Shown here: piece by piece, positions 1,586 through 54,664 of the stretch
Numbering within the stretch: the first letter of the stretch is position 1
Layout of the letters: every line of letters begins with the position of its first letter
DNA from: Octopus sinensis
Lineage: Eukaryota
NCBI RefSeq assembly: GCF_006345805.1
Contig: NC_043008.1
Span: 49,352,001 to 49,416,000 of the forward strand
Length of the DNA stretch: 64,000 bases
Direction of reading: 5' to 3'
Notes under the pieces: generated by a model
What the model was told of the DNA's origin: nothing
Database searches by the model: none
What the model saw: only the letters and a program-made list of their open reading frames with translations
Position numbers and translations under genes: made by a program

Positions 1586-2020
1586 TATTGTTTTTTACTC
1601 TAGGTACAAGGCCTGAAATTTTTGTGGAGGGGGCCAGTCGATTAGGTTGCCCTCAGTATGCAGCTGGTACTTAATTTATTAACCCCGAAAGGATGAAAGG
1701 CAAAGTCGACCTTGGCGGAATTTGAGCTCAGAACGTAAAGACAGACGAAATACCGCTAAGCATTTCGCCCGGCATGCTAATGCTTCTTATTTATTATTTC
1801 TTTATTGCCCACAAGGGGCTAAACATAGAAGGGACAAACAAAGACAGTCAAAAGGATTAAGTTGATTATATCGACTCCAGTGCGTAACTGGTACTTGATT
1901 TATTGACCCCGAAAGGATGAAGGCAAAGTTGACCTCAGCGGAATTTGAACTCAGAATGTAGTGGTAGATGAAATACCGCCAAGCATTTTGCCTGGCATGC
2001 AAACGTTTCTGCCAGGTCAC
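1585..2020 (-). mobile_element. Two tandem copies of tRNA-derived SINE family B
   Basis: Core cccgaaaggatgaaaggcaaagtcgacc..gaatttgaactcagaa occurs twice; B-box GAGTTCAAATTCC on minus; two different 3' tails. Confidence 0.9.
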
Positions 2021-3110: not shown

Positions 3111-3829
3111 GATTTAATTTCAAACCTATGTAAATGGTTGAGTATCTCCTGATCATTCTGTAGAAGGAAGGGGCTTGGTCCATACCATGAAGGCTCAGTA
3201 CTTGACCGGTATTTTTTTTTTTTATTTACCCTCGAGGGATAAAAGTGAATGTTTACCTTGGTGGGATTTGAACTCAGAAATCAAAGAGACAGCCACTACT
3301 GCAAAGCATTTTTCCCCAATGCTTTTATGATTCTGCCAGCTTGGCAGATTTATTATTGGTGAGTAAAATGTAGATTGTCTGACATTAGCGATTCTCTCAA
3401 GTCTATTGATTATGGTGATGAGGTGAAATGACTATGGCTGAGCTGCAAATGCTGCTTGCTGAATAAGGGGATGATGTTTTCTGTTCTATAATACTCAACA
3501 GTGGCTTATAATAGCATTTAGAAACATAATTACTGTATTTGATGGCATAAAAGACACACAGACATATGAGGTGCATTCCAATTTCAGCAGAGCGTATTCA
3601 GGAAAAAAAAAGAAAGAAAATTTAACGCATTAAAGCATGTAACGTTTAAAGCATCTTTGCTTATAGGATGCAGGGTGGTATTTTGGAGACATTTTTTTGG
3701 TAAAGAAAAAAAAAGGTATTTTATGTACCATCAAATATGGTAATCTTATTCCAAATGCTGTATATTATCAATTCTCTGTGTGGTAATGAAATCTTTTTTG
3801 TGGGGTCTTTAAAATCAAAGAGAGTTCAC

Positions 3830-3900
3830 CTGTTAAGTCACCTTATGTCTAATCAGTTATGTACTCCTTTTGACTCACCTGTCAAAGAAAGTAAAGTTTC
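3830..3900 (-). other. Candidate recursive splice site (polypyrimidine-CAG|GTGAGT) with short RS-exon
   Basis: Minus strand ctttactttctttgacag|gtgagtca, junction 3879/3878; downstream alternative donors at 3842 and 3830. Confidence 0.45.
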
Positions 3901-4090
3901 TATATTTAAGGAGTGGGACATTTGGTGTTGTGCAGGTGAAGCAGATATCATGGAATGGTTATTTAGCCATAGATTCTTGTACTTGGCATCAACTTTTGAC
4001 GATTATTCTCCTGTATAGCAGGCAAGGTAAGGAGGCCAGTGATTGGATCTTATCATTGATTTTTTTTTTTTTATAACATAAAGCTGATAT

Positions 4091-4121
<31 letters not shown>

Positions 4122-4539
4122 ATCCTCCCCTTCCATCCTTTACTCTCGCATATCTCTCTCTCTCCCCCTCTCCCCCTCTCAATACCAGTCTGTAGCAAGT
4201 TTTTCCAGTCTACATAACCAGATTACATTCCACTTTCAGCCCTGCAGCCAGTGAAATACATCCTGTCTGCTACAATGGTGACTTGTCCTGTCCCCAAAGC
4301 ATTAATGTACGGTTAAATAAACTGGTCTGGCTCCCGATTCACTCATAGTTAAGCGTCTTTCCAGGAGCACAAACCAACCTGGTTTGAGAGTTTGCAACTT
4401 GCTAAACCCTTCAGTTGCTTGAGCAACATGCTTACAAATCAGCTAGACCCCCCCCCCCGCCATCCATCCATCCATCCATCCATCCACCCATCCACATACA
4501 CTTCTACATGTCTGTTTGTCTCTGTGTGTGTGTATGTGC

Positions 4540-4554
<15 letters not shown>

Positions 4555-4572
<18 letters not shown>

Positions 4573-4765
4573 TGTGTGTGTGTGTGTATATATATATGTA
4601 CGATGGGCTTCTTTCAGTTTCTATCTCCCAAATGCACTGACGAGGCTTTGATCTGCCCAAGGCTATAGTTGAAGGCACTTGCCCAAGGTGCCATGCAGTG
4701 GGACTGAACCTGGAACCATGTGGTTGGAAAGCAAGCTACTTACTACACGGCCACGCCTGTGCCTA
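4555..4765 (-). mobile_element. SINE family A, 5' half
   Basis: cacttgcccaaggtgccatgcagtgggactgaacctggaaccatgtggttgg. Confidence 0.85.
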
Positions 4766-4778
4766 ATATATAATGTAT

Positions 4779-4811
<33 letters not shown>

Positions 4812-5034
4812 GGCACGTAAAAAGCACCATCCGATCGTGGCCGTTTGCCAGCCTCGCCTGGCACGTAGAAACCACCCACTACACTCACGGAGTGGTTGGC
4901 ATTAGGAAGGGCATCAAGCTATAGAAACATTGCCAGATCAGACTGAGCCTGGTGCAGCCTTCTGGCCTCCCAGACCCCAGTTGAACCGTCCAACCCATGC
5001 TAGCATGGAAAGCGGACGCTAAACGATGATGATG

Positions 5035-6371: not shown

Positions 6372-6554
6372 TGTGTGTGAGAGAAAGTTCTTTTTTTTTT
6401 AAAAAATGTGTCTTTTCCCTGTTTTCCATTGGAAAGAATAGACCTATCATTCGCCAGCTGTCATCATCATCATCATCATTTTATATCTGCTTTTCATGCA
6501 AGGTCATCATGGTTAGTAAGCACATATTGTGTGTGTGTGTGTGGTACTTACTAC

Positions 6555-6933
6555 CCATAAGGTGGACGAAATGCTCAGCGGTATTTCGTCTGCCACTACG
6601 TTCTGAGTTCAAATTCAGCTGAGGTCGACTTTGTTTTTCATCCTTTCGGGGTCGATTAAATAAGTACCAGTTACGCTCTGGGGTCGATATAATTGACTTA
6701 ATCCGTTTGTCTGTCCTTGTTTGTCACTTCTGTGTTTAGCCCCTTGTGGGCAATAAAGAAATAGGTATTTCGTCTGCCACTACGTTCTGAGTTCAAATTC
6801 CGCCGAGGTCGACTTTGCCTTTCATCCTTTCGGGGTCGATTAAATAAGTACCAGTTACGCACTGGGGTCGATATAATCGACTTAATCCGTTTGTTCCTTC
6901 TGTGTTTAGCCCCTTGTGGGTAGTAAAGAAATA
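6555..6933 (+). mobile_element. SINE B tandem dimer with 12-bp TSD
   Basis: TSD ggtacttactac at 6543-6554 and 6934-6945; second unit restarts at ggtatttcgtc (6764). Confidence 0.92.
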
Positions 6934-7149
6934 GGTACTTACTACTCACTAAATGAGCTGGGAAACCTCATCTTGCTTGTGTTTCGTTTATCTTTTGTTT
7001 GGCTTTTATGACAAGATGCCCGTCCTAACACCAATGTCATTAATATTACCCCAATATCAATGCTTGGGAGAGGAAGCTGTGTACAGCTTCCCTGAGGAGC
7101 AGTCAACAGAGCATGAAACAGTCTGTCTAGAGACTCCCACTTACTAGGG

Positions 7150-36538: not shown

Positions 36539-39366
36539 GGCAAAATATTTTTTCTGATGCTCAGCTGATTATTACATTTGTCACTATTATAACCACCACC
36601 ACCACCACCACCATCATCACGTTTCCCATCCTTACACATTGGCAAGGGTTGGGTAAATTTATTTGTTTCTTTATTGCCCACAAGGGGCTACACTCAGAGG
36701 GGACAAACAAGGACAGACAAACGGATTAAGCCGCTTATATCGACACCAGTACGTAACTGTACTTATTTAATCGACTCCGAAAGGATGAAAGGCAAAGTCG
36801 ACCTCGGCGGAAGACGCAGTATTATCTGGCTGGCTGCTCTCCCTGTCGCCAACCCTTACCTGTTTTCCAACTCAGATATTTTTTATATTTGTCTGGTCTT
36901 CCACATGCCCAGACCACCAAGCTACCACAACGTATGGTTGAAAGGAGATGAAGACGTAACATCACATTCACATACTTACGTGCATGAATGCATGTGTATG
37001 GGTGAATGGTTTCTGATTGAAATGGACGGTCAGCTATTTTAAGGAGAGGAATTAGCTGATACCATCACGTCCAGTACTTGACTGGTTCTTAATCTTAATT
37101 AATCCCAAATAGATGAAAGGCCAAGTTGACCTTAGCAGGATTTGAACTCAGAGTATAAGGAACCAGAATGAATATAGCAAAACTCATATTCTAATGCTCT
37201 AACAATTCTGCCAGGGTCCTGACTAGACTGAGGGTTACACGGTTCATTTCCATAGTTTGTCTTTGGTGCAGCATTGTTTTCCTGTAAAAGACACTTCACC
37301 GTCACCTACATGTTTCACCTCTCTGTAAGTATTTATCGTGGGGATAGCAGCTTCCTTATTAGTACAGGCTGTGTTTTTAATTAATAAGTATTGACCCTTA
37401 ATTTTCTCCAGTGGTCTGGAGAAGGGATCAGTGGTACTGTAGTGAGGCCTATGCTGAATTTTGGACCATAGTTCTTGGGTTTTCCTCGCCCCAAATCATC
37501 ACAGTCTAAAGTATCTCCATAAAAGGAAAATTGTAAGCATAAAAGGTATTAATGGCTGTACGAACATAGCTGGGCCAATCAGCACTGGATGATTTTTATG
37601 GTTGATGCGGTAAACTTTGAAGGAAGCATGCAAGTTTTCCTACCAAACATTTTTACTGAAAATTCTAGAAGTGTGGCTTACAGCTATAAAAGCTGGCAAA
37701 TTCAACCTCAGGTCAGAGCCACCCAGCTGTCTCGTGGAATTTGTCATTTGTCTCGGCGTATTGTTCTCTCTTCCCCTCTTTCATTTTTCTTTAGTAACAT
37801 ACTCAACAAAAGGCTCCAACATACAAGTGTTGAATAACACATATCAGTTACATGTAGTGATTTAATTTCCTTATATTACTTTCGTAATGTATCCAGCAAG
37901 TTATGTACAGAAGACTCCTAAGTGTTATGTTATGTTTGAACGCTGATTCGTCAATTTATTGAATGGACATTACTCGTTATAGTCAGCTTTCGTTGCAAGC
38001 TGATGCGGTCTGCTACTGGTACCTTGTAAACCAGTACAACCTGTTCCATGGTCGCGTGGTCGGCGACTAAACCGGCTTCCCTCCACTTGAGTAGCTTGCT
38101 TCTCTTGTCAAGAGGGTGTCTAGACACTCAGCAGGACTAAAAAACTAAAAGATCTATTGAAATGACAGATGAGCTCCTTGTGGACCACCGTCCATCCAGT
38201 TGGAGAAAGCAATAGCAAATCACCCCAATATCTCTGTCAAAAGAAAATACTACAACGAAGTCAGAACAAAGTAACACTGAGGGTTCGTCCGATGGGAGAA
38301 GACTTGCGCTTAATGGAGAAGACTTGCGTTGTAGGCTCGTCAATGCGTGCGATACATGACGACGGCAACATTACTTTTACTTGACAGCCGCTCCTACGCC
38401 TACATGTATGTTAATGAAATAATTGAAAAGTCATTAAGATTTTAGTGCGTTCATTGTCTTCGCTCACAAACTACTTAATAGTGTGAAAAGCCAACAAAAA
38501 CTTTACGACCAACCATAAACTAAATATTTTCATTGAGATGCATGTTTTAATTTTAAACCGCAAACGCATTTTATTCTTATTTACATCACATAAAGATTCA
38601 GTTGCTTGGTCTCCAATCGTCATCAGCTGTCTTATTTCAGGGCGTGTACGTAATACCAAACTGGGTTCGAATTATGGACCATCATATCTAAACTTTGGGT
38701 TAATAACGTTATTACCCATCAGACCACCGGCGCATGAACGAAAAGCGTTGGTAGTCTGGTGGTTATGAACTAACTTCACTCCCAGAGAGATCATAGATCA
38801 AACCAAGTGAAGCGAAGTGCCAATGTTATATTAAAAAAAAAAAAAAGTTTTCAAGTGAGTATGGGGGTTCCGAAAGATTATAAATTAACAACTTATCTCA
38901 GTTATTTGATGAGGTAGCCTTTTTTTTTCTTTCTCACTGTAAAGAGTACAAGTTAATTTATGACATAATTATACAAGCACACACAGGCATTCAAGGTATG
39001 AGGTCATTTTGACATTAATTGGACAGGTCTACGTGTTTAGAAAGGCCTGAGTAGATCCATGGCGCGAATATTTGATAGCATTTGAGCTATAGCCATCTAA
39101 AATATTTTATTGAAATGAGCTGTCCTTTGTTTTTTAACATGGTATGAAGTGTCTCGTTGGAGGTTTTTGTGTGTGTTCATGGAGTTAGCTACATGTGTTT
39201 GTCACTTTATATATTAGGAATTAACCTTCAAATAATTTCTAGCCACCTTGGTTCTCATGTAACATGTCTCTTTCACATTGTCAATTGAATAATTTAAAGT
39301 ATAATGGTTGTGTGTAGCTAGTCGTTTCATGCGCCAAAGCATGTGTCTGTCTGATATGTTTGTGTG

Positions 39367-39401
39367 TATATAAAACCACAGTTTAAGGATAAGTTTCAGT
39401 C
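39367..39401 (+). promoter_or_regulatory. TATA box + Inr core promoter candidate
   Basis: TATATAAAA at 39367 (-31) and TCAGTC Inr with +1 A at 39398. Confidence 0.4.
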
Positions 39402-41183
39402 AGCCATAAACCACTCCCCCGCCAAACAATACTGTAATTCGATGTGGACACACAGACGTTAAAAGGTGTGGTTTCGCTTTATTATTATTATTGAAATCCA
39501 TATCTCATTACAGGCTTGTCACTTTCTGTTTGAACGAATAAAATCGCGTCTATTTCTGTTGTCAGTCGTACCCTGCTCGGCCTGTTCTTGGCCACACAAA
39601 CTCTAAATCTACCTGCAAACCTATCAGATATGCTAGGAATTCATGTGCATAATTTAATTCATCTTTCATTGAAAGTAACGTTGAACGTCGTGTTTATAAT
39701 TTGGAAGATAATTCGATCCCGGATTGTAGCCTTTCACTACTTTGGCGCACCTACTAATATCATTGAGAATGGGGGTTGCATAACATTCATGAGAATGTTA
39801 CATAACCCCCATTCTCACTTTAAAATATTTAAGGCTCTGATGAACATCTAAAAAGTTTCTTTCTTATTATATTCAATTTCTTTTTATTCAACAATTTCTA
39901 AAGAAAGAAAATCCAGAAGTGTTGAGCCCTTAATCCCTCTTTCTGCATCCCTAAACATAAAAACGGTTTTTCTGTATCTTTAAATTTTTATTTTATTAAA
40001 AACACGTTTCTGTCCCCCAAACACTATTTTCTTTAAAAAATGGTTTTTCTGTACTTCTAAACATTTTCTTAAAAAAAAAAAGGGTCTGTTTTATGTTCCT
40101 CAACATTTTTAGTTCCTTTTAAAAAGTTCGGGTTTCTGTAACCCTAAATTCTAAACAAGGCATTGAAGAAACGTCTACGCGGTCTTTTGACTTGCTAGTA
40201 ATAGTAGTCAAGTCTCCTTCAAATCACATCTGGATGCCTTGAAAACGGAGGACAAAAAGATGATCTGGTTTGTGGTTGGGACTACCTTAGACCAAAGAAT
40301 ATTTGATGATTTTCCCGTCTGTGATTGCTGATAATTTCTCATCTCTAATCAGTTAAAATTTCATTTGTTTTTACTTTCCTAATGTGCTACATTTTATCTA
40401 ACGAAAGATAAATTAAATATAATCCTTACAGTGTTTTCTGTATTACTTTACTCATCTCCTAAAATATAAAAATATGGATTTCTTTCGGTTAAGTCACACA
40501 CACATGCAACAAATAAAAAAAAGAGAAACCGGACGAGGCCGTGCGTGTGGCTAATAAGTTCATTTCTAACCCACGTGGTCCTGTGTTCGATCGCATTTCG
40601 CTGGTCATATCGAGCAATTAATTATAGTCTCCTATATAAAACCTCGGGTTGGGGGTAATCCTGACCTTTCCTAAGCAGTGTGCAAAGGTGAATTAAAGGG
40701 ACGTTAAAAGGGAGTCGATTATATTGGGATCGAAGGGATGGGTCGGGATACCTGACTGACAAACTCTTGCAAACCACAACAACAACCGAAAATCAATCTT
40801 CCAAAGAAATTATCAACTTATTTCCTGTTATTGATCGTTATCTTGTCACATGATTACTTTCCTTTATTTACTTTTCTAAAGAGAAACATAATTTACCTTA
40901 AAAGCTGTGACGACGTAAAATATATCATTTAAATGCCAATCCTTAAAATATACGGAGAGAGAGAGAACAACAATAATAAGTTTCTAATAATAATAATAAT
41001 ACCACCACCACCACCCACGTTTTATATTTGTGGGTATGAGGCACGTTGCTCTTCATTCGAGTTATAGTCGTTGGTTCATTCATTAACTAAGGTCGGTCCT
41101 AATGATACCTCAAATACTATGACCGTTCGAATTTCACTCAAATGAAAGCCTTTTCTTTCACATTCAATTAACTTTTTTCACTC

Positions 41184-41372
41184 ATGGCTTCAAAATTACT
41201 TCGACTTTTTAAACAAGTGAGTTTAATTATTAATAACTTTAAATTACTTTTTAATTCCTTCAACCTTTTTCGCTCTACTTTCTCGTCTTTCACCTTTACT
41301 TCTCTTACATAGTTTCACTATCAAAATTTCTCTCGTTTTATTTGTATCGTGTACGATAAAATTTTCAAATAA
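41184..41372 (+). other. Candidate spliced small ORF/uORF (30 aa) with 96-nt intron 41217-41312
   Basis: ctcATGG start; CAA|gtgagt donor; long pyrimidine tract ending ttctcttacatag; MASKLLRLFKQ/FHYQNFSRFICIVYDKIFK*. Confidence 0.3.
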
Positions 41373-43399
41373 GAACCACTAAAACCGTATACTTTAAAGG
41401 AAAACGGACTGATGTGGTGACGTTCATGCTTTTCCAAGGAACGAACAAAGTAATGGCTCAGTTCGCCGTCAGCTTATTTCTTCCCAGTCTTTAGAATTTG
41501 GCAATGGCCCCTTCGATTACATCTTCGGGTTTTCGACGATGTTCTTTACTAAAAAAAGGAAAAAAAAAGAGATGGACCTTGTGACGAATTAAAAAGGAGC
41601 CATTTATCTATTATTAAATACAGTAATATATATTAGTTATAATTCCAACTAAGGAAATAATCGAAAAGCCAGAATTTTCCGATTCTATAAAAGTAAAATC
41701 GAAAGTTTTCTTGCAGAATATTTATTGAGTTTTTTGTTTTTTTTTTAAACCCCCTTAAATTCTTTTTCTTCTCTTTTCTTTATGAAATATCCGAAACATT
41801 TGTCGTTAAAAGTTTTTAATATTATTAACTTATGTTTAATGACATTTCTGAATATTTTTACGTGTTCCAAGTGTTTCTTCTAAGATATTTGAATATATTT
41901 AGGTTTGTTAATTACACCCCCCCCAAAAAAAACCCCGATAGTTTTTCATTTGACTCAACTTGCTAGAAATAGTGTCCAAATTTGCCTCATATCACACTTT
42001 TCACCCCCTGGGACAATATAGCCTTAGATACACAAAAAGACTGGATGGTCACGACTGAGACACCTTTTATTATAGATTTGTTCGGTTAGGGCTGACCTGG
42101 GGTTAAACAGTAGCGATAGTATCGCAGCGCGCGCACTCACAATTTTCTTTTCATTCGATCCCTGAATGAAATTGTAAAAAATCACTGGGGATATTAATCA
42201 ATTAAAGTATAGTTAATTACTTTTATTTCATATTTTTCATGTTTTCTAATGCTAAAAAGAAGCTATTGTAAAACTTTCCTCTGTGTGTTTGTGTGTGGCA
42301 AAAAATGGATGGATAGAATAAGTACCAAAGGCACGAAATTGTAAGGACATTGACTGATGAGGAATTTGCTACGGATTTTCTGTTGTGTTTTTGTTAAATT
42401 TTTGAAATATTAAAAAATAAGTACTGGGGTCGATTCATTCGACTAATAATTCAAGACAGTGCCCCAGCATGGCCGCAATCTAATGACTGAAACAAGTAAA
42501 AGATTATCTATCTGTCTATTAGTGAGATCAATAGCTTTATTGATCTGCAAGTTGTTTTTTGGTGTTAAGCAAAAATGAATGAATGGATGAGTATTCCCTT
42601 CTGGTTTAGAGTCAGGGAGGGGCCCCAGATACAGCCATCACTCCTCACCTTTCAGTATTGCAGGCCTATGCTCTGCCAGGGCCCTCCCCATCTGGTCTTT
42701 GATTTGATCGCTCCATCTACCTCTTTGCTGTTCTCAAACCTTATTACCATATTTCTCTTGAAAACAACGAAAAATTTAGTAGAATAACTTTGTCCTTATT
42801 TAGTGGATTAGTATCAAAATGTTTAAATATGCTAGCAGAGTGGTTCCCAAAATTAGTAAATTATTTTGTCATAGAACCCTTTATCAATTTTCCATTAATC
42901 ACAGGATCCATAACTGTATTGTACATGTAATCCACGTCACCTTAATTCTTATACAATAAATGAAACAAAAATTGAATTTTTTTTTCAACATCATTATTTT
43001 GTTATGGACTTTTCTATACTTGTTTGTCAAGGCAAGATTTTTTTAATGTTCAGATGCCCTTCCTTTTGCTAACCCTCACCTGTATCTCAGCAAAGTAATA
43101 TTTCCCAAGTGGTCAGACATGTTTTTTATGAAAGACTTGAAACAAATGACACCACTTTTGTGATAGTGATGCTTATTTACAACCATCATACAATGTTAAG
43201 ACAAAGAGACCCTCATATGGACGCATGCAAACATATACATAGAATAAGCTTCTTTCATTTTTCATCTACCAAATCTACTCAACAAGACTATTGTCAACCC
43301 AGGGCTACAGTAGAATAATGTAACCATGTTTCCCCCTCAAATGCAAGATACCCTTTTATGCCCCTTAATACTCCTTCCCCTTCTCAGTTGAGGGATCTT

Positions 43400-44639: not shown

Positions 44640-45368
44640 TATTGCTGAGAGAAAGCTATCCCTGAAAGGTTGGGCAGAGGTGGCTAATGTAAGCCATTTG
44701 AGAATATGTTGGGAACAGACAGAGGTACAAAAGATTTATATATATAGAACAAAGGATTTTATAAATAAATTAGTGGAGGAAAAGTGTGACAACGTTCTTG
44801 GAGAGATCTTGGGCATCAAAGATTAACTAGCCACTCTTTTCTGGAGAACTTTCGGCCCAGGACCAATAGATAATTCCAAAAAATCTCTGGCCGGCAGTGC
44901 TACTGGGAAACTTTGCCTGTTTGCGATTGACTTTACAGGCACGGAACTGCCGTCAGCTGAGCATGTCCGAGATGCACGCAAGACGACGAGATGGTCCTGC
45001 ATGCACTTGTTCAGTTCCTGAGCATTGCTGACCTGTGGGTTTATGCCGAACACCTGCTGTTGCATGTGGGATGGATGCAGCTGTCAACTGAATCCATCAT
45101 GAAAATTGCCCTGCTGCCTTCCTTTAACCAGGATGGAAAGGCTGTGTTTATTTGCCATGGCAAAAGAGGTCTGATGGATGGGATTGAAGGGGCTGAAGAC
45201 AAACACTTTTCTCTTTGGCCAATCCTTGATCAACTTCTTCAAGTTTTGCTTGAAAAGGAAAATAAGGTTAGAGAGGAAATATTGTCTTCTGGTAAGTTTG
45301 CTGTAAGATGGATGAAAGTGGTGAGAATGGTGTGAGTGAACAGGCCTGCACTGAGCATACACCTGTAA
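44640..45368 (+). mobile_element. Tx1/L1-clade LINE ORF2 3' relic
   Basis: AERKLSLKGWAEVANV, then TFGPGPIDN, LPVCD*LYRHG and ACPRCTQDDEMVLHAL (CCHC zf-RVT-like knuckle); frameshifts and stops. Confidence 0.8.
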
Positions 45369-47126: not shown

Positions 47127-47189
47127 CCTGTCCCCACCCACCTGTCCCCACCCACCTGTCCCCACCCACCTGTCCCCACCCACCTGTCC
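47127..47189. repeat. 14-bp minisatellite (CCTGTCCCCACCCA)x4
   Basis: Perfect tandem units; G-rich on minus. Confidence 0.95.
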
Positions 47190-47369
47190 ATAATTATTAT
47201 TGTTTGAGATATATAAAGACTGTTTTTGCATAATTTCATGAAATTGAGCAGGATCAAGGCATGTGGAAGAATTACATATTTCAAGTCTATCCAACAGGTA
47301 AAATGTACATAAAACCATAAATGATGATGATGATGAAGAACAGTTTAATGTCAATATTGGTCTAGTCAG

Positions 47370-48959: not shown

Positions 48960-49193
48960 TACCTATTTCTTTATTACCCACAAGGGGCTAAACATAGAGG
49001 AGACAAACAAGGACAGACATAGGTATTAAGTCGATTACATCGACCCCAGTGCGTAACTGGTACTTAATTTATCGACCCCGAAAGGATGAAAGGCAAAGTC
49101 AACCTCGGCGGAATTTGAACTCACAACGTAACGACAAGCGAAATACCGTTAAGCATTTCGCCCGGCGTGCTAACGTTTCTGCCAGCTCTCCGC
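48960..49193 (-). mobile_element. Young full SINE B
   Basis: CpGs retained; TSD ctgttatac at 48954-48962 and 49194-49202. Confidence 0.92.
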
Positions 49194-50657
49194 CTGTTAT
49201 ACTTTATATATGTGATGGTGTGTGGTGCCTTAGTGGTTACTGTATTTGGCTAGCAATCATATGGTTCCATCGTGGGTTCAATTCCTGGCAGTCTGTTCTG
49301 TTCTTGAGCAAGACACTTTATTTAACATTGTTCCAGTCCGATCAGCTAGCAAAAATGAGTTGTACCTGTATTTTAAAGGGGCCAGTCTTGTCATCCCTGT
49401 GTTCAACTGGTACTTATTTTATTGGCCCCAGAAAGGATGTAAGGCAAAATCGACCTCGGCGGAATTTGAACTCAGAATGTAAAGATGGATGAAATATTGC
49501 TAAGCATTTCACCGAGCATGCTAATGATTCTGCCAGCTCACCACCTTAATAATAATAATAATAATGATAACAATAGCCATGGTGCTATTAATGTCTGTTA
49601 ACTTCTACTTAAAGGTTATACCTAAAAAACTTGTTAATTTCTCTGGAGTTTCACTTTTATCTCAGAACCAAAATTATGAAGAAATTATGTTTAAGCAACA
49701 AACCATTATAAAAGTTGTGAGACTTTTTGGGTTCTGCTTCTTGAATTTCAGAAGGAATATTATTTGGAATTGTTTCTTTTTCTTTTTTTTTTTTTTGGTT
49801 CCCCTTTTTTCTCTTATTTTCTTGAGTCTAAAGCAGTCTCTCTCATCAACGTACCCCCACCCCCCATAAGTAAAAGCTGACATGATATTACAACCAGTAA
49901 ATGCTAATCTGTTCAGTTCTGGTCATTAGTTCCATCTTCCAAAGTTCTATTAGGGAGGGCGTCAGGCACAGACCTTTTCTCGGCAGGAGTCGATTAGTTT
50001 TGCTTCAGTTCTCAAACCATTTCCTTGTTGGCACATGTTCCAACTTATCATCTCGGTATTTACTTTGTAAATTTGTCCATCTCCATTAGCTTCAAGCTTT
50101 ACCCTTTTTTTCTCCCCACTAAACACAACGGAGATTTCCTTATACTTTTCAAGAACTGAGAAAAAAGCAATTTTTTTAAATCGCTGTTTCTATGACAACG
50201 TAGAATAAAACCAATTTAATTGCCAATAACTGAGGTTAAATGGTTGAGTGGTTGATGTTTTGTTCAAGCAAGTCATAAGGCTTGTGTTCAGTTCCACTGC
50301 AGGCATTATTACAGGGCAGAATCTTTGGCAGAATCATTAGAGCTTCAAGCAAAATGCCTTGTGGTATTACGGTTCCTTACACTAAGAGTTCAAATCGCAC
50401 TTATGTCAATTTGGCTTTTCATGTTCAGTAAAATGGCTGTTAAACTAAAAATAAGAACAAATATTTACTGCACTATTTCATGATTATTTCATGTAATACT
50501 TACTGGCCTCATAATGCTGTTAGTATTGGTTGTATACGACGAGTGTTGCCCATCCCTTTGACTAAATAAAATTATCTGGTGATAGCTTATTTCTTCGAAT
50601 TCACCCTTGGCTGGATTTGTGTTATTTCCTTGTTTCAGTTTTCACCTTAGGAAAGTA

Positions 50658-53069: not shown

Positions 53070-53393
53070 GGCCCTCCATTGGTAATGACGAAGAGTGTAC
53101 CAGTGGATCTAATCAACGGAACAACTTGGTCGTGAAATTAATGATCAAGTGGCTGAGCACCCCACAGACACGTGTACCCTTAATGTAGTTCTCAGGGAGA
53201 TTCAGCACGACACAGAATGTGATAAGGATGGCCCCTTTTAGTTACAAATACAACTCATTTTTGCCAGCTGAGTGGAGTGGAGTAACGTGAAATAAACTGT
53301 CTCGCTCAAGGACACAACACACCGATAGGAATTGAACTCACGACTTTATGATTGCAAACCAAACACCCTAACCACTAAGCCACGGACCTTCAC
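53070..53393 (-). mobile_element. Near full SINE family G
   Basis: gtggcttagtggttagg head, gagttcaattcc B-box, gtgtccttgagcgagac. Confidence 0.8.
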
Positions 53394-53689: not shown

Positions 53690-54076
53690 CGGCATGGGCC
53701 AACAATTTGAAGAGGAATGGGTTTGGTTGATTTCATTGACCCCCAGCACTTGATTGGTGCTTTTATTGACCTCAGTGAGATTTGAACTCAGAACATAAGG
53801 AGCCGGAAGAAATATCACTAAGTGTTTTGTCCAATGCCCTAATGATTCTGCCAGCTTACTAATTGAATAATAATAATAATAATAATCCTTTCTATTATAA
53901 GCATAAAGCCTGAAATTTGGGGGTCCCCAGTGCTCAACTGGTATTTATTGTATCAACCCTGAAAGGATAAAAGGTGAAGTTGACCGTGGCAGGATTTGAA
54001 CTCAGAACGCAGTGACAGGTGAAATACCTCTAAGTATTTCATCCAGTGTGCTGACGATTCTGCCAGTTTGCCACCT

Positions 54077-54112
<36 letters not shown>

Positions 54113-54310
54113 TAGTAATAATGGTTTCAAATTTTGGCTCAAGGCCAGCAATTTTAGGGGAGGGATCAAGTCGATTATATCAACCCCAGTATTCAACTGG
54201 TACTTATTTTATTAATCCCTGAAGGATGAAAGCTAAAGTCAACTGTAGCAGCATTTGAACTCAGAACAGAAGGTCAGAGGAAATACTGCTGACGATTCAG
54301 TCAGATCACT
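53690..54310 (-). mobile_element. Three tandem degraded SINE B copies
   Basis: Three gatttgaactcagaac cores with different tails. Confidence 0.8.
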
Positions 54311-54664
54311 ATCATAATAATAATAATAATAATGATGATAATAATAATCATAATGATAAGGTAAACAGAATTTATTCAATAAGTTGACTTTTCACAAATA
54401 AAAATGTATCTTTCGTTTATTCATCAAAGAAAATACGATTATCTCTTCATGGTTAAGCTATTTTACTTATTTATTAATTTTTTACGTTTGAATGCTTCTT
54501 CCTGAGCTAACCATTCAACCTTGAAAGGGAGTGGAACCTGTTGTTAGCTAGGAAGACTGAGACAGAATTATATCTGTTTCACACAGTTGTATAATAACCA
54601 CATAACAACATCCTTTTTATGTGTTTATTCAATTGTAAGGGTGTTACTTGGGTGAAATCTTATT

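What the first reader, a model, noticed from the sequence alone, without database searches (positions are those of the whole stretch)
3830..3900. Textbook recursive-splicing (ratchet) site in a probable cephalopod intron
Seen: the minus strand reads ctttactttctttgacag|GTGAGT, a strong 3' splice site fused directly to a consensus 5' splice site. Alternative donors follow 37 and 49 nt downstream, and all three frames of that mini-exon are closed by stops. Known: this is the architecture of Drosophila ratchet points and vertebrate RS-exons in very long introns. Inference: recursive splicing operates in this locus; I am not aware of it being described in molluscs. A rough composition estimate makes CAG|GTRAGT plus a 13/15 pyrimidine tract unlikely by chance in 64 kb.
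Basis: partly seen in the sequence, partly recalled or inferred. Interest (0 to 1): 0.7.

Follow-up and report, generated by a model that had tools for sequence, protein, structure and literature searches.

The report
Splice-site look-alike in an octopus intron
The acceptor-plus-donor motif is really in the sequence, in unique DNA that is probably a long intron of an octopus gene. A motif this good is expected by chance thousands of times in such a genome, and nothing available here shows it is used for stepwise (recursive) intron removal.

Summary
The minus strand does read ctttactttctttgacAG|GTGAGT, with the junction at 3879|3878. Weaker donors lie 37 and 49 nt downstream, and stops close all three frames of the mini-exon.

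It is the best AG|GT of 453 in the window. They give an equal position-weight-matrix (PWM) score in about 14%. That means hundreds to thousands of chance sites in a roughly 2.7-Gb genome.

The site lacks TT at -5/-6, which 196 of 197 fly ratchet points have. Its only consensus branch point is 13 nt from the AG.

The context partly fits:
- The repeats are octopod.
- The site lies in unique DNA.
- The window is strongly CpG-depleted (o/e 0.38, against 0.84 in another octopus locus). In octopus that marks methylated gene bodies, so an intron is likely.

No host exon, gene or transcribed strand could be identified. No RNA data or orthologous sequence was reachable.

Verdict: most likely a fortuitous cryptic splice-site pair (about 0.65). 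A genuine recursive site remains possible (about 0.12) and is easily tested with total RNA-seq and other Octopus genomes. Interest is low to moderate.

The parts
3879..3896 (-). Acceptor-like element: pyrimidine tract ctttactttcttt (3896-3884), then gacAG (3883-3879). Position -5 is G and -6 is T.
   Evidence: sequence. PWM 9.7 bits, ranking 57th of 7,597 AG sites in the window, so good but not exceptional.
3873..3878 (-). Consensus donor-like hexamer GTGAGT immediately after the AG. This is the putative ratchet-point donor.
   Evidence: 13.3 bits with its CAG context, among the top 3 of 7,618 GT sites; one of only four AGGTRAGT in the window.
3892..3892 (-). Only consensus-like branch-point A (uuuAc). 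It lies 13 nt upstream of the AG. An upstream AG at 3901-3900 limits alternatives further away.
   Evidence: Read directly. This is inference, not tested.
3836..3844 (-). Downstream donor-like site AAG|GTGACT. It would close a 37-nt mini-exon.
   Evidence: 8.35 bits, rank about 102 of 7,618; stops in all frames.
3824..3832 (-). Second downstream donor-like site CAG|GTGAAC. It would close a 49-nt mini-exon.
   Evidence: 7.9 bits, rank about 140; it lies in an 11-nt near-repeat of the main site (TCACCTGTTAA / TCACCTGTCAA, 49 nt apart).
4011..4035 (-). Upstream acceptor-like site cctccttaccttgcctgctatacAG. With the GTGAGT it frames a 132-nt pseudo-exon (4010-3879) that is closed in all frames.
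   Evidence: 8.25 bits. The frames were read.
4024..4032 (+). Strong donor-like site on the opposite strand, AAG|GTAAGG. It shows that splice-like signals occur on both strands here.
   Evidence: 11.4 bits.
3827..3938 (.). Three CAGGTG/CACCTG E-box hexamers (3933-3938, 3876-3881, 3827-3832). TGACAG and TGAGTCA overlap the junction. The 6-bp inverted repeat TTTGAC/GTCAAA flanks AGGTGA.
   Evidence: 42 E-boxes in the window. (the only AGGTGA triple within 60 nt). (fold z-score -2.1).

Best explanation
The site is a fortuitous juxtaposition of an acceptor-like tract and a consensus GTGAGT. It lies in unique, non-coding DNA that most likely belongs to a long intron of a germline-methylated, broadly expressed octopus gene.

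If the minus strand is the transcribed one, the site would be one of many intronic pseudo-exons or cryptic splice-site pairs. The spliceosome might sample it occasionally, but it would not be a selected ratchet point. If the plus strand is transcribed, it does nothing in splicing.

Shown: the sequence, its uniqueness, the octopod origin, the CpG depletion and the chance rates. Inferred: the intronic location and the lack of function.
For: - Motif-neutral scoring: 14% of composition-matched 64-kb windows contain an AG|GT at least as good, 0.146 per window. That is thousands per genome.
- The extra features are common. 7.5% of the window's AGGT sites have an equally good donor 25-80 nt downstream, and 11-21% have all frames closed.
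- The acceptor is only 57th best in the window. It has G at -5, whereas 196 of 197 fly ratchet points have TT at -5/-6. The only consensus branch point lies 13 nt from the AG.
- Equally strong splice-like signals lie on the opposite strand 150 nt away.
- No host exon, and no upstream exon to splice from, could be found. 275 ORF pieces gave no credible Pfam hit. The only protein-like ORF is a LINE fragment.
- Strand indicators are inconclusive.
Against: - It is the single best AG|GT of 453 in the window.
- Its local architecture matches the published model point for point (PMC8605326). That model has a strong ratchet donor, weaker donors about 40-50 nt downstream, an out-of-frame mini-exon with stops, unique sequence and a probable long-intron context.
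- Three AGGTGA within 52 nt is the only such cluster in the window.
- Requiring the motif plus a downstream donor gives only about 0.01 chance sites per window.
- In flies, most very long introns carry recursive sites (PMC6110457). If cephalopods behave likewise, a motif this strong on the sense strand would more often than not be real.
Confidence: 0.65

Rival explanations
1. Genuine recursive splice site. The minus strand is the sense strand of a very long intron. The 37- or 49-nt cryptic RS-exon is defined through the acceptor at 3879 and a downstream donor. The upstream exon is ligated to G3878, which regenerates a 5' splice site. The stronger GTGAGT then out-competes the downstream donors, so the mini-exon is always skipped.
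For: - The architecture matches the RS-exon model: juxtaposed acceptor and donor, a cryptic exon of about 50 nt, a ratchet donor stronger than the exon donor, and out-of-frame content.
- Scores are 13.3 bits against 8.35 and 7.9. Stops close all frames.
- It is the top AG|GT in the window and lies in unique sequence.
- CpG depletion indicates a gene body (PMC9476566).
- All four AGGTRAGT in the window are on the minus strand.
- Donor-like sites are mildly in excess on the minus strand: 41 against 30 expected, p about 0.05.
Against: - There is no evidence of minus-strand transcription or of any upstream exon.
- The motif is within chance expectation at genome scale.
- It lacks TT at -5/-6, has a short interrupted Y-tract and a branch point only 13 nt away.
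- Methylated octopus genes are mainly housekeeping genes, whereas neuronal genes tend to be unmethylated. Fly recursive-site hosts are enriched in development and morphogenesis genes.
- Conservation and RNA data were not obtainable.
Confidence: 0.12
2. Ordinary 5' splice site of an unannotated non-coding or poison exon on the minus strand. An example is the 132-nt unit 4010-3879, framed by the acceptor at 4011 and GTGAGT at 3878. It could be a lncRNA, UTR or NMD-targeted cassette exon. The pyrimidine tract before the AG would then be incidental.
For: A good acceptor (8.25 bits) lies 132 nt upstream of a top-ranked donor (13.3 bits), which is a typical exon-definition distance. All frames are closed, consistent with a non-coding or poison exon (read).
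Against: Pseudo-exons of this quality are common in introns. The ORF across the region has no homologue, and no exactly matching product is on record among 5.8 billion proteins, a collection that includes Logan assemblies containing octopus-like sequence. There is no expression data.
Confidence: 0.08
3. Transcription-factor site cluster acting at the DNA level, in an intronic enhancer or silencer. The hexamer CAGGTG (an E-box for Snail, ZEB or bHLH factors) occurs three times in 112 nt. The junction itself overlaps TGACAG (MEIS-type) and TGAGTCA (AP-1). The splice-site resemblance would be a by-product, because CAGGTGAGT contains an E-box.
For: E-boxes at 3933, 3876 and 3827. It is the only AGGTGA triple in the window. 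A short palindrome TTTGAC-N6-GTCAAA is centred on the junction.
Against: There are 42 E-boxes in the window, so a triple is only mildly unusual. The factor assignments are recalled consensus sequences, not tests. The region is CpG-depleted like its surroundings, unlike the repeat-free, non-depleted island at 38-42 kb.
Confidence: 0.05

Closest known systems
Drosophila intronic ratchet points (zero-nucleotide recursive splice sites with a cryptic RS-exon)
   Same: Juxtaposed acceptor and donor around AG|GT. A strong regenerated donor (GTGAGT). A weaker donor about 40-50 nt downstream that could define a cryptic, out-of-frame exon containing stops. Location in unique DNA of a probable long intron.
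   Different: - G instead of T at -5, whereas 196 of 197 fly sites have TT at -5/-6.
- The pyrimidine tract is short and interrupted rather than more prominent than in ordinary introns.
- The donor is GTGAGT rather than GTAAGT, which I recall as the fly preference (my own knowledge).
- Conservation, host intron, junction reads and lariat reads are all unknown.
Vertebrate RS-exons in very long introns (human, mouse, zebrafish long neuronal genes)
   Same: An exon-definition unit that starts with a reconstituted 5' splice site and carries premature stops, so inclusion would be a poison event. The ratchet donor competes with the RS-exon donor.
   Different: Vertebrate sites were defined from saw-tooth coverage and junction reads in introns over 150 kb, and no such data exist here. 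The host gene here appears to be of the methylated, housekeeping type rather than a long neuronal gene.
Intronic pseudo-exons, decoy exons and cryptic splice-site pairs
   Same: Good acceptor and donor matches at exon-like spacing, no coding capacity, deep intronic unique sequence, with similar signals on both strands.
   Different: The zero-length AG|GT juxtaposition with a consensus donor is a rarer subclass. It is the top-scoring AG|GT in this 64-kb window.

Membership tests
Drosophila-type intronic ratchet point | [quoted passage not shown] | tested here: met
   cAG|GTGAGT at 3881-3873 on the minus strand. It is the top combined PWM score of 453 AGGT sites.
Drosophila-type intronic ratchet point | Pyrimidine tract more prominent than in ordinary introns, with TT at -5/-6 (196 of 197 sites) | tested here: not met
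   -6 is T and -5 is G (ctttctttGAcag). The tract is 12/15 Y with an internal A. The acceptor ranks 57th in the window.
Drosophila-type intronic ratchet point | Cryptic RS-exon of about 50 nt closed by a downstream donor that is weaker than the ratchet donor | tested here: met
   Donors at +37 (8.35 bits) and +49 (7.9 bits) against 13.3 bits. Base rate for at least one such donor is 7.5% of AGGT sites. Model.
Drosophila-type intronic ratchet point | Lies on the sense strand of a long (>10-40 kb) intron | tested here: inconclusive
   No exon was recognisable in 64 kb. CpG o/e of 0.38 against 0.84 suggests a methylated gene body. The strand is undetermined.
Drosophila-type intronic ratchet point | Core motif far more conserved than flanks and than control AGGT sites | not testable with these tools
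   No cephalopod genome collection was searchable by DNA. A 25-mer of the site was absent from metagenome contigs. The ORF spanning the site has no homologue.
Drosophila-type intronic ratchet point | Junction reads from exon to ratchet point, saw-tooth coverage and recursive lariats | not testable with these tools
   No RNA-seq access.
Vertebrate RS-exon | RS-exon carries premature stops or is out of frame, so inclusion is a poison event | tested here: met
   37 and 49 nt are not multiples of 3, and stops occur in all three frames. Base rate is 11-21% of AGGT sites.
Vertebrate RS-exon | Located in very long introns of long genes, with RNA evidence | not testable with these tools
   The host gene was not identified.

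The most novel reading that the evidence does not exclude
The site is a working recursive splice site (ratchet point with a cryptic 37- or 49-nt RS-exon) in a long intron of a methylated, broadly expressed Octopus gene. That would be the first documented recursive splicing in a mollusc or any lophotrochozoan. It would also show that the fly TT(-5/-6) rule is not universal.
Probability: 0.12. Interest if true: 0.55.

Novelty: not a real feature. Interest (0 to 1): 0.2.

Why it matters
Recursive splicing has been documented in flies and vertebrates. The papers I searched contain nothing on it in cephalopods. Octopus genes have very long introns, so cephalopods are a natural place to ask whether stepwise intron removal is a general bilaterian solution.

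A validated site would extend the mechanism to Lophotrochozoa and give a motif for a genome-wide search. One unvalidated motif match does not do that. Its main value is as a cheap, precisely specified test case (junction 3879|3878) for anyone holding octopus total RNA-seq.

Tried and rejected
1. Repeat origin. Self-BLAST and repeat finding show 3342-4539 is unique, so the motif is not part of a SINE or TE consensus.

2. Coding exon at the site. The 93-104-aa plus-strand ORF across the site has no exactly matching product on record and no homologue. Minus-strand frames are closed.

3. Host-gene search.
- 235 ORF pieces of >=55 aa and 40 splice-flanked pieces of 28-54 aa were scanned against Pfam. 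Nothing scored better than E = 0.0017.
- The best-looking exon candidate (45132-45291, plus strand) proved to be the 3' end of a LINE ORF2. Its 46 homologues include several with zf-RVT. The PDB hits were repeat artefacts.
- Ten ATG-ORFs are not in the protein collection.

4. It lies in AT-rich, non-protein-like sequence with only middling scores, so it is not convincing.

5. Strand inference. Base skews are small, and the single O. bimaculoides calibrator gene is uninformative. The AATAAA and GTRAGT asymmetries follow base composition. The donor excess on the minus strand is marginal and includes one tandem array.

6. Structured RNA. Rfam found nothing at the site, only sub-threshold hits in microsatellites at 4500-4820. 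The fold z-score is -2.1.

7. Orthologue retrieval. A 25-mer of the site is absent from metagenome contigs. No tool searches cephalopod genomes by DNA.

Full report
**Observation.** On the minus strand the window reads gaaactttactttctttgacAG|GTGAGTcaaaagg. The AG is at 3880-3879 and GTGAGT at 3878-3873. AAG|GTGACT follows with its GT at 3841 (+37), and CAG|GTGAAC with its GT at 3829 (+49). Both mini-exons have stops in all three frames. The pyrimidine count directly before CAG is 12/15, not 13/15. Only four AGGTRAGT occur in the window. All four are on the minus strand, and only this one has a pyrimidine tract. The region 3342-4539 has no copy elsewhere in the window or in a 62-kb O. bimaculoides comparison locus, so it is not a repeat consensus.

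I then used a generic acceptor-plus-donor position weight matrix (frequencies recalled from textbook consensus, hence approximate). By that score the site is the best of 453 AG|GT. Its donor is among the top 3 of 7,618 GT sites. Its acceptor is only 57th of 7,597 AG sites. Block-shuffled windows reach its combined score in 14% of cases, or 0.146 sites per window.

Among the window's own AGGT sites, 7.5% have an equally good donor 25-80 nt downstream and 1.8% have two. Between 11% and 21% have all frames closed. A 49-kb stretch of real O. bimaculoides DNA had none at this score, consistent with that rate.

**Organism and context.**
- A repeat-derived ORF hits 'uncharacterized protein LOC106868243 [Octopus bimaculoides]'.
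- The genomic locus of that protein (L001, CM046612.1) shares many interspersed repeats with the window at 75-92% identity. The window is therefore octopod.
- About 29% of the window is covered by such repeats, and microsatellites add more.
- No host coding exon was recognisable. 235 ORF pieces of >=55 aa and 40 splice-flanked pieces of 28-54 aa gave no Pfam hit better than E = 0.0017.
- The one protein-like ORF (44961-45332, plus strand) is the C-terminal end of a LINE ORF2. Several of its homologues carry zf-RVT.

The most informative context signal is CpG content:
- The window has CpG o/e 0.38 with GpC o/e 0.94.
- The O. bimaculoides comparison locus has CpG o/e 0.84.
- Both repeats (0.45) and unique DNA (0.30) in the window are depleted.
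- In O. bimaculoides fewer than 10% of CpGs are methylated. They cluster in the bodies of a subset of constitutively expressed genes, and transposons and intergenic DNA have very low methylation (PMC9476566).

The depletion therefore argues that most of the window lies in a transcribed gene body. With no exon in sight, that means a long intron. This step is inference.

**Strand.** Nothing settled it. Base skews are small and the single calibrator gene is uninformative. The hexamer asymmetries follow composition. Donor-like sites of >=9 bits number 41 on the minus strand against 30 expected (p about 0.05), but four of them belong to one tandem array.

**Anatomy against the known model.** Published work describes fly ratchet points as juxtaposed acceptor and donor with a cryptic RS-exon of about 50 nt. 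That exon is closed by a downstream donor weaker than the ratchet donor. Its content is poorly conserved and out of frame, and the core is ultraconserved (PMC8605326).

The site meets the local criteria. The donors score 13.3 bits against 8.35 and 7.9. The mini-exon lengths are 37 and 49 nt, both with stops.

It fails the most diagnostic fly feature. 196 of 197 ratchet points have TT at -5/-6 and an unusually prominent pyrimidine tract (preprint 10.1101/006163). Here -5 is G and the tract is short and interrupted.

The only consensus-like branch point (uuuAc, A3892) lies 13 nt from the AG. An AG at 3901-3900 restricts more distant branch points (read).

Conservation, junction reads, saw-tooth coverage and lariats are the defining evidence in all published studies. 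None could be tested here.

**Other readings of the same bases.**
- A good acceptor at 4011 (cctccttaccttgcctgctatacAG) lies 132 nt upstream. Together with GTGAGT it frames a non-coding pseudo-exon.
- The reverse complement of that tract is itself a strong plus-strand donor, AAG|GTAAGG, at 11.4 bits. Splice-like signals are therefore present on both strands.
- CAGGTG is also an E-box, and three occur within 112 nt.
- The junction overlaps TGACAG and TGAGTCA and sits in the loop of a UUUGAC/GUCAAA hairpin (fold z-score -2.1).

None of these is individually significant.

**Weighing.** If cephalopods have a few hundred recursive sites of this architecture, as flies and humans do, then real sites and the few hundred chance sites genome-wide would be comparable in number. 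That gives a prior of roughly 0.1-0.3. Probable gene-body context raises it. Unknown strand halves the benefit. The missing TT, the weak acceptor and the housekeeping-type methylation lower it.

| Reading | Probability |
|---|---|
| Working recursive site | about 0.12 |
| Ordinary unannotated non-coding exon boundary | about 0.08 |
| DNA-level factor-binding cluster | about 0.05 |
| Fortuitous, unselected cryptic splice-site pair | about 0.65 |

**Novelty.** Full-text searches found no paper combining recursive splicing with octopus. A broader search across cephalopod, mollusc and squid terms listed none among its top 20 hits, though it did not require the recursive-splicing term. A validated site would be a new member of a known kind in a new phylum. 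As it stands, the finding is an unvalidated motif match. The decisive tests are cheap and are listed under next steps.

Noticed in passing
window 38086-42401: This 4.3-kb stretch is the longest repeat-free stretch in the window. Its CpG o/e is about 0.9-1.5 at only 30-40% GC, inside a window that is otherwise at 0.13-0.56. It is bounded on both sides by interspersed repeats. It looks like an unmethylated, TE-free island, possibly a promoter or regulatory block, or the gap between two methylated gene bodies.
   Followed up: partly
window 41185-41222 (+): Inside the island there is a short ATG-initiated frame, MASKLLRLFKQ, followed directly by a consensus donor, caa|GTGAGT (9.2 bits). It is a speculative first coding exon of a plus-strand gene. 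All three donors of >=9 bits in the island are on the plus strand.
   Followed up: no
window 44961-45332 (+): A 124-aa open frame is the C-terminal end of a non-LTR retrotransposon ORF2. It has 46 homologues at E <= 1e-3, and several of the longer ones carry zf-RVT (PF13966). It looked like the best exon candidate in the window but is a LINE fragment.
   Followed up: yes
window 1-64000 compared with L001: The window-wide CpG o/e is 0.38, against 0.84 in another O. bimaculoides locus. Repeats and unique DNA are both depleted. This implies regional germline methylation, which in octopus is reported only for the bodies of a subset of constitutively expressed genes.
   Followed up: partly
window 47139-47190 (-): A tandem array with a 14-nt period (gggtggggacagGT...) creates four identical strong donor-like sites, CAG|GTGGGT, and four E-boxes. 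It inflates motif counts on the minus strand.
   Followed up: no
The surrounding sequence is AT-rich and not protein-like.
   Followed up: no
window 53322-53385 (-): This is the only Rfam hit above gathering score, a tRNA-like sequence (32.6 bits) that ARAGORN does not call. It is probably the head of a tRNA-derived SINE.
   Followed up: no
window 1617-1787, 6531-6954, 9348, 23079, 26671, 27921, 32206, 32552, 49010-49531, 53891-54320: At least 13 copies of one SINE-like family of about 170-250 nt occur in both orientations (8 one way, 5 the other). The same family is present in the O. bimaculoides comparison locus. Translated copies give recurring pseudo-peptides such as RPRKDERQSRPRRNLNSER.
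   Followed up: partly
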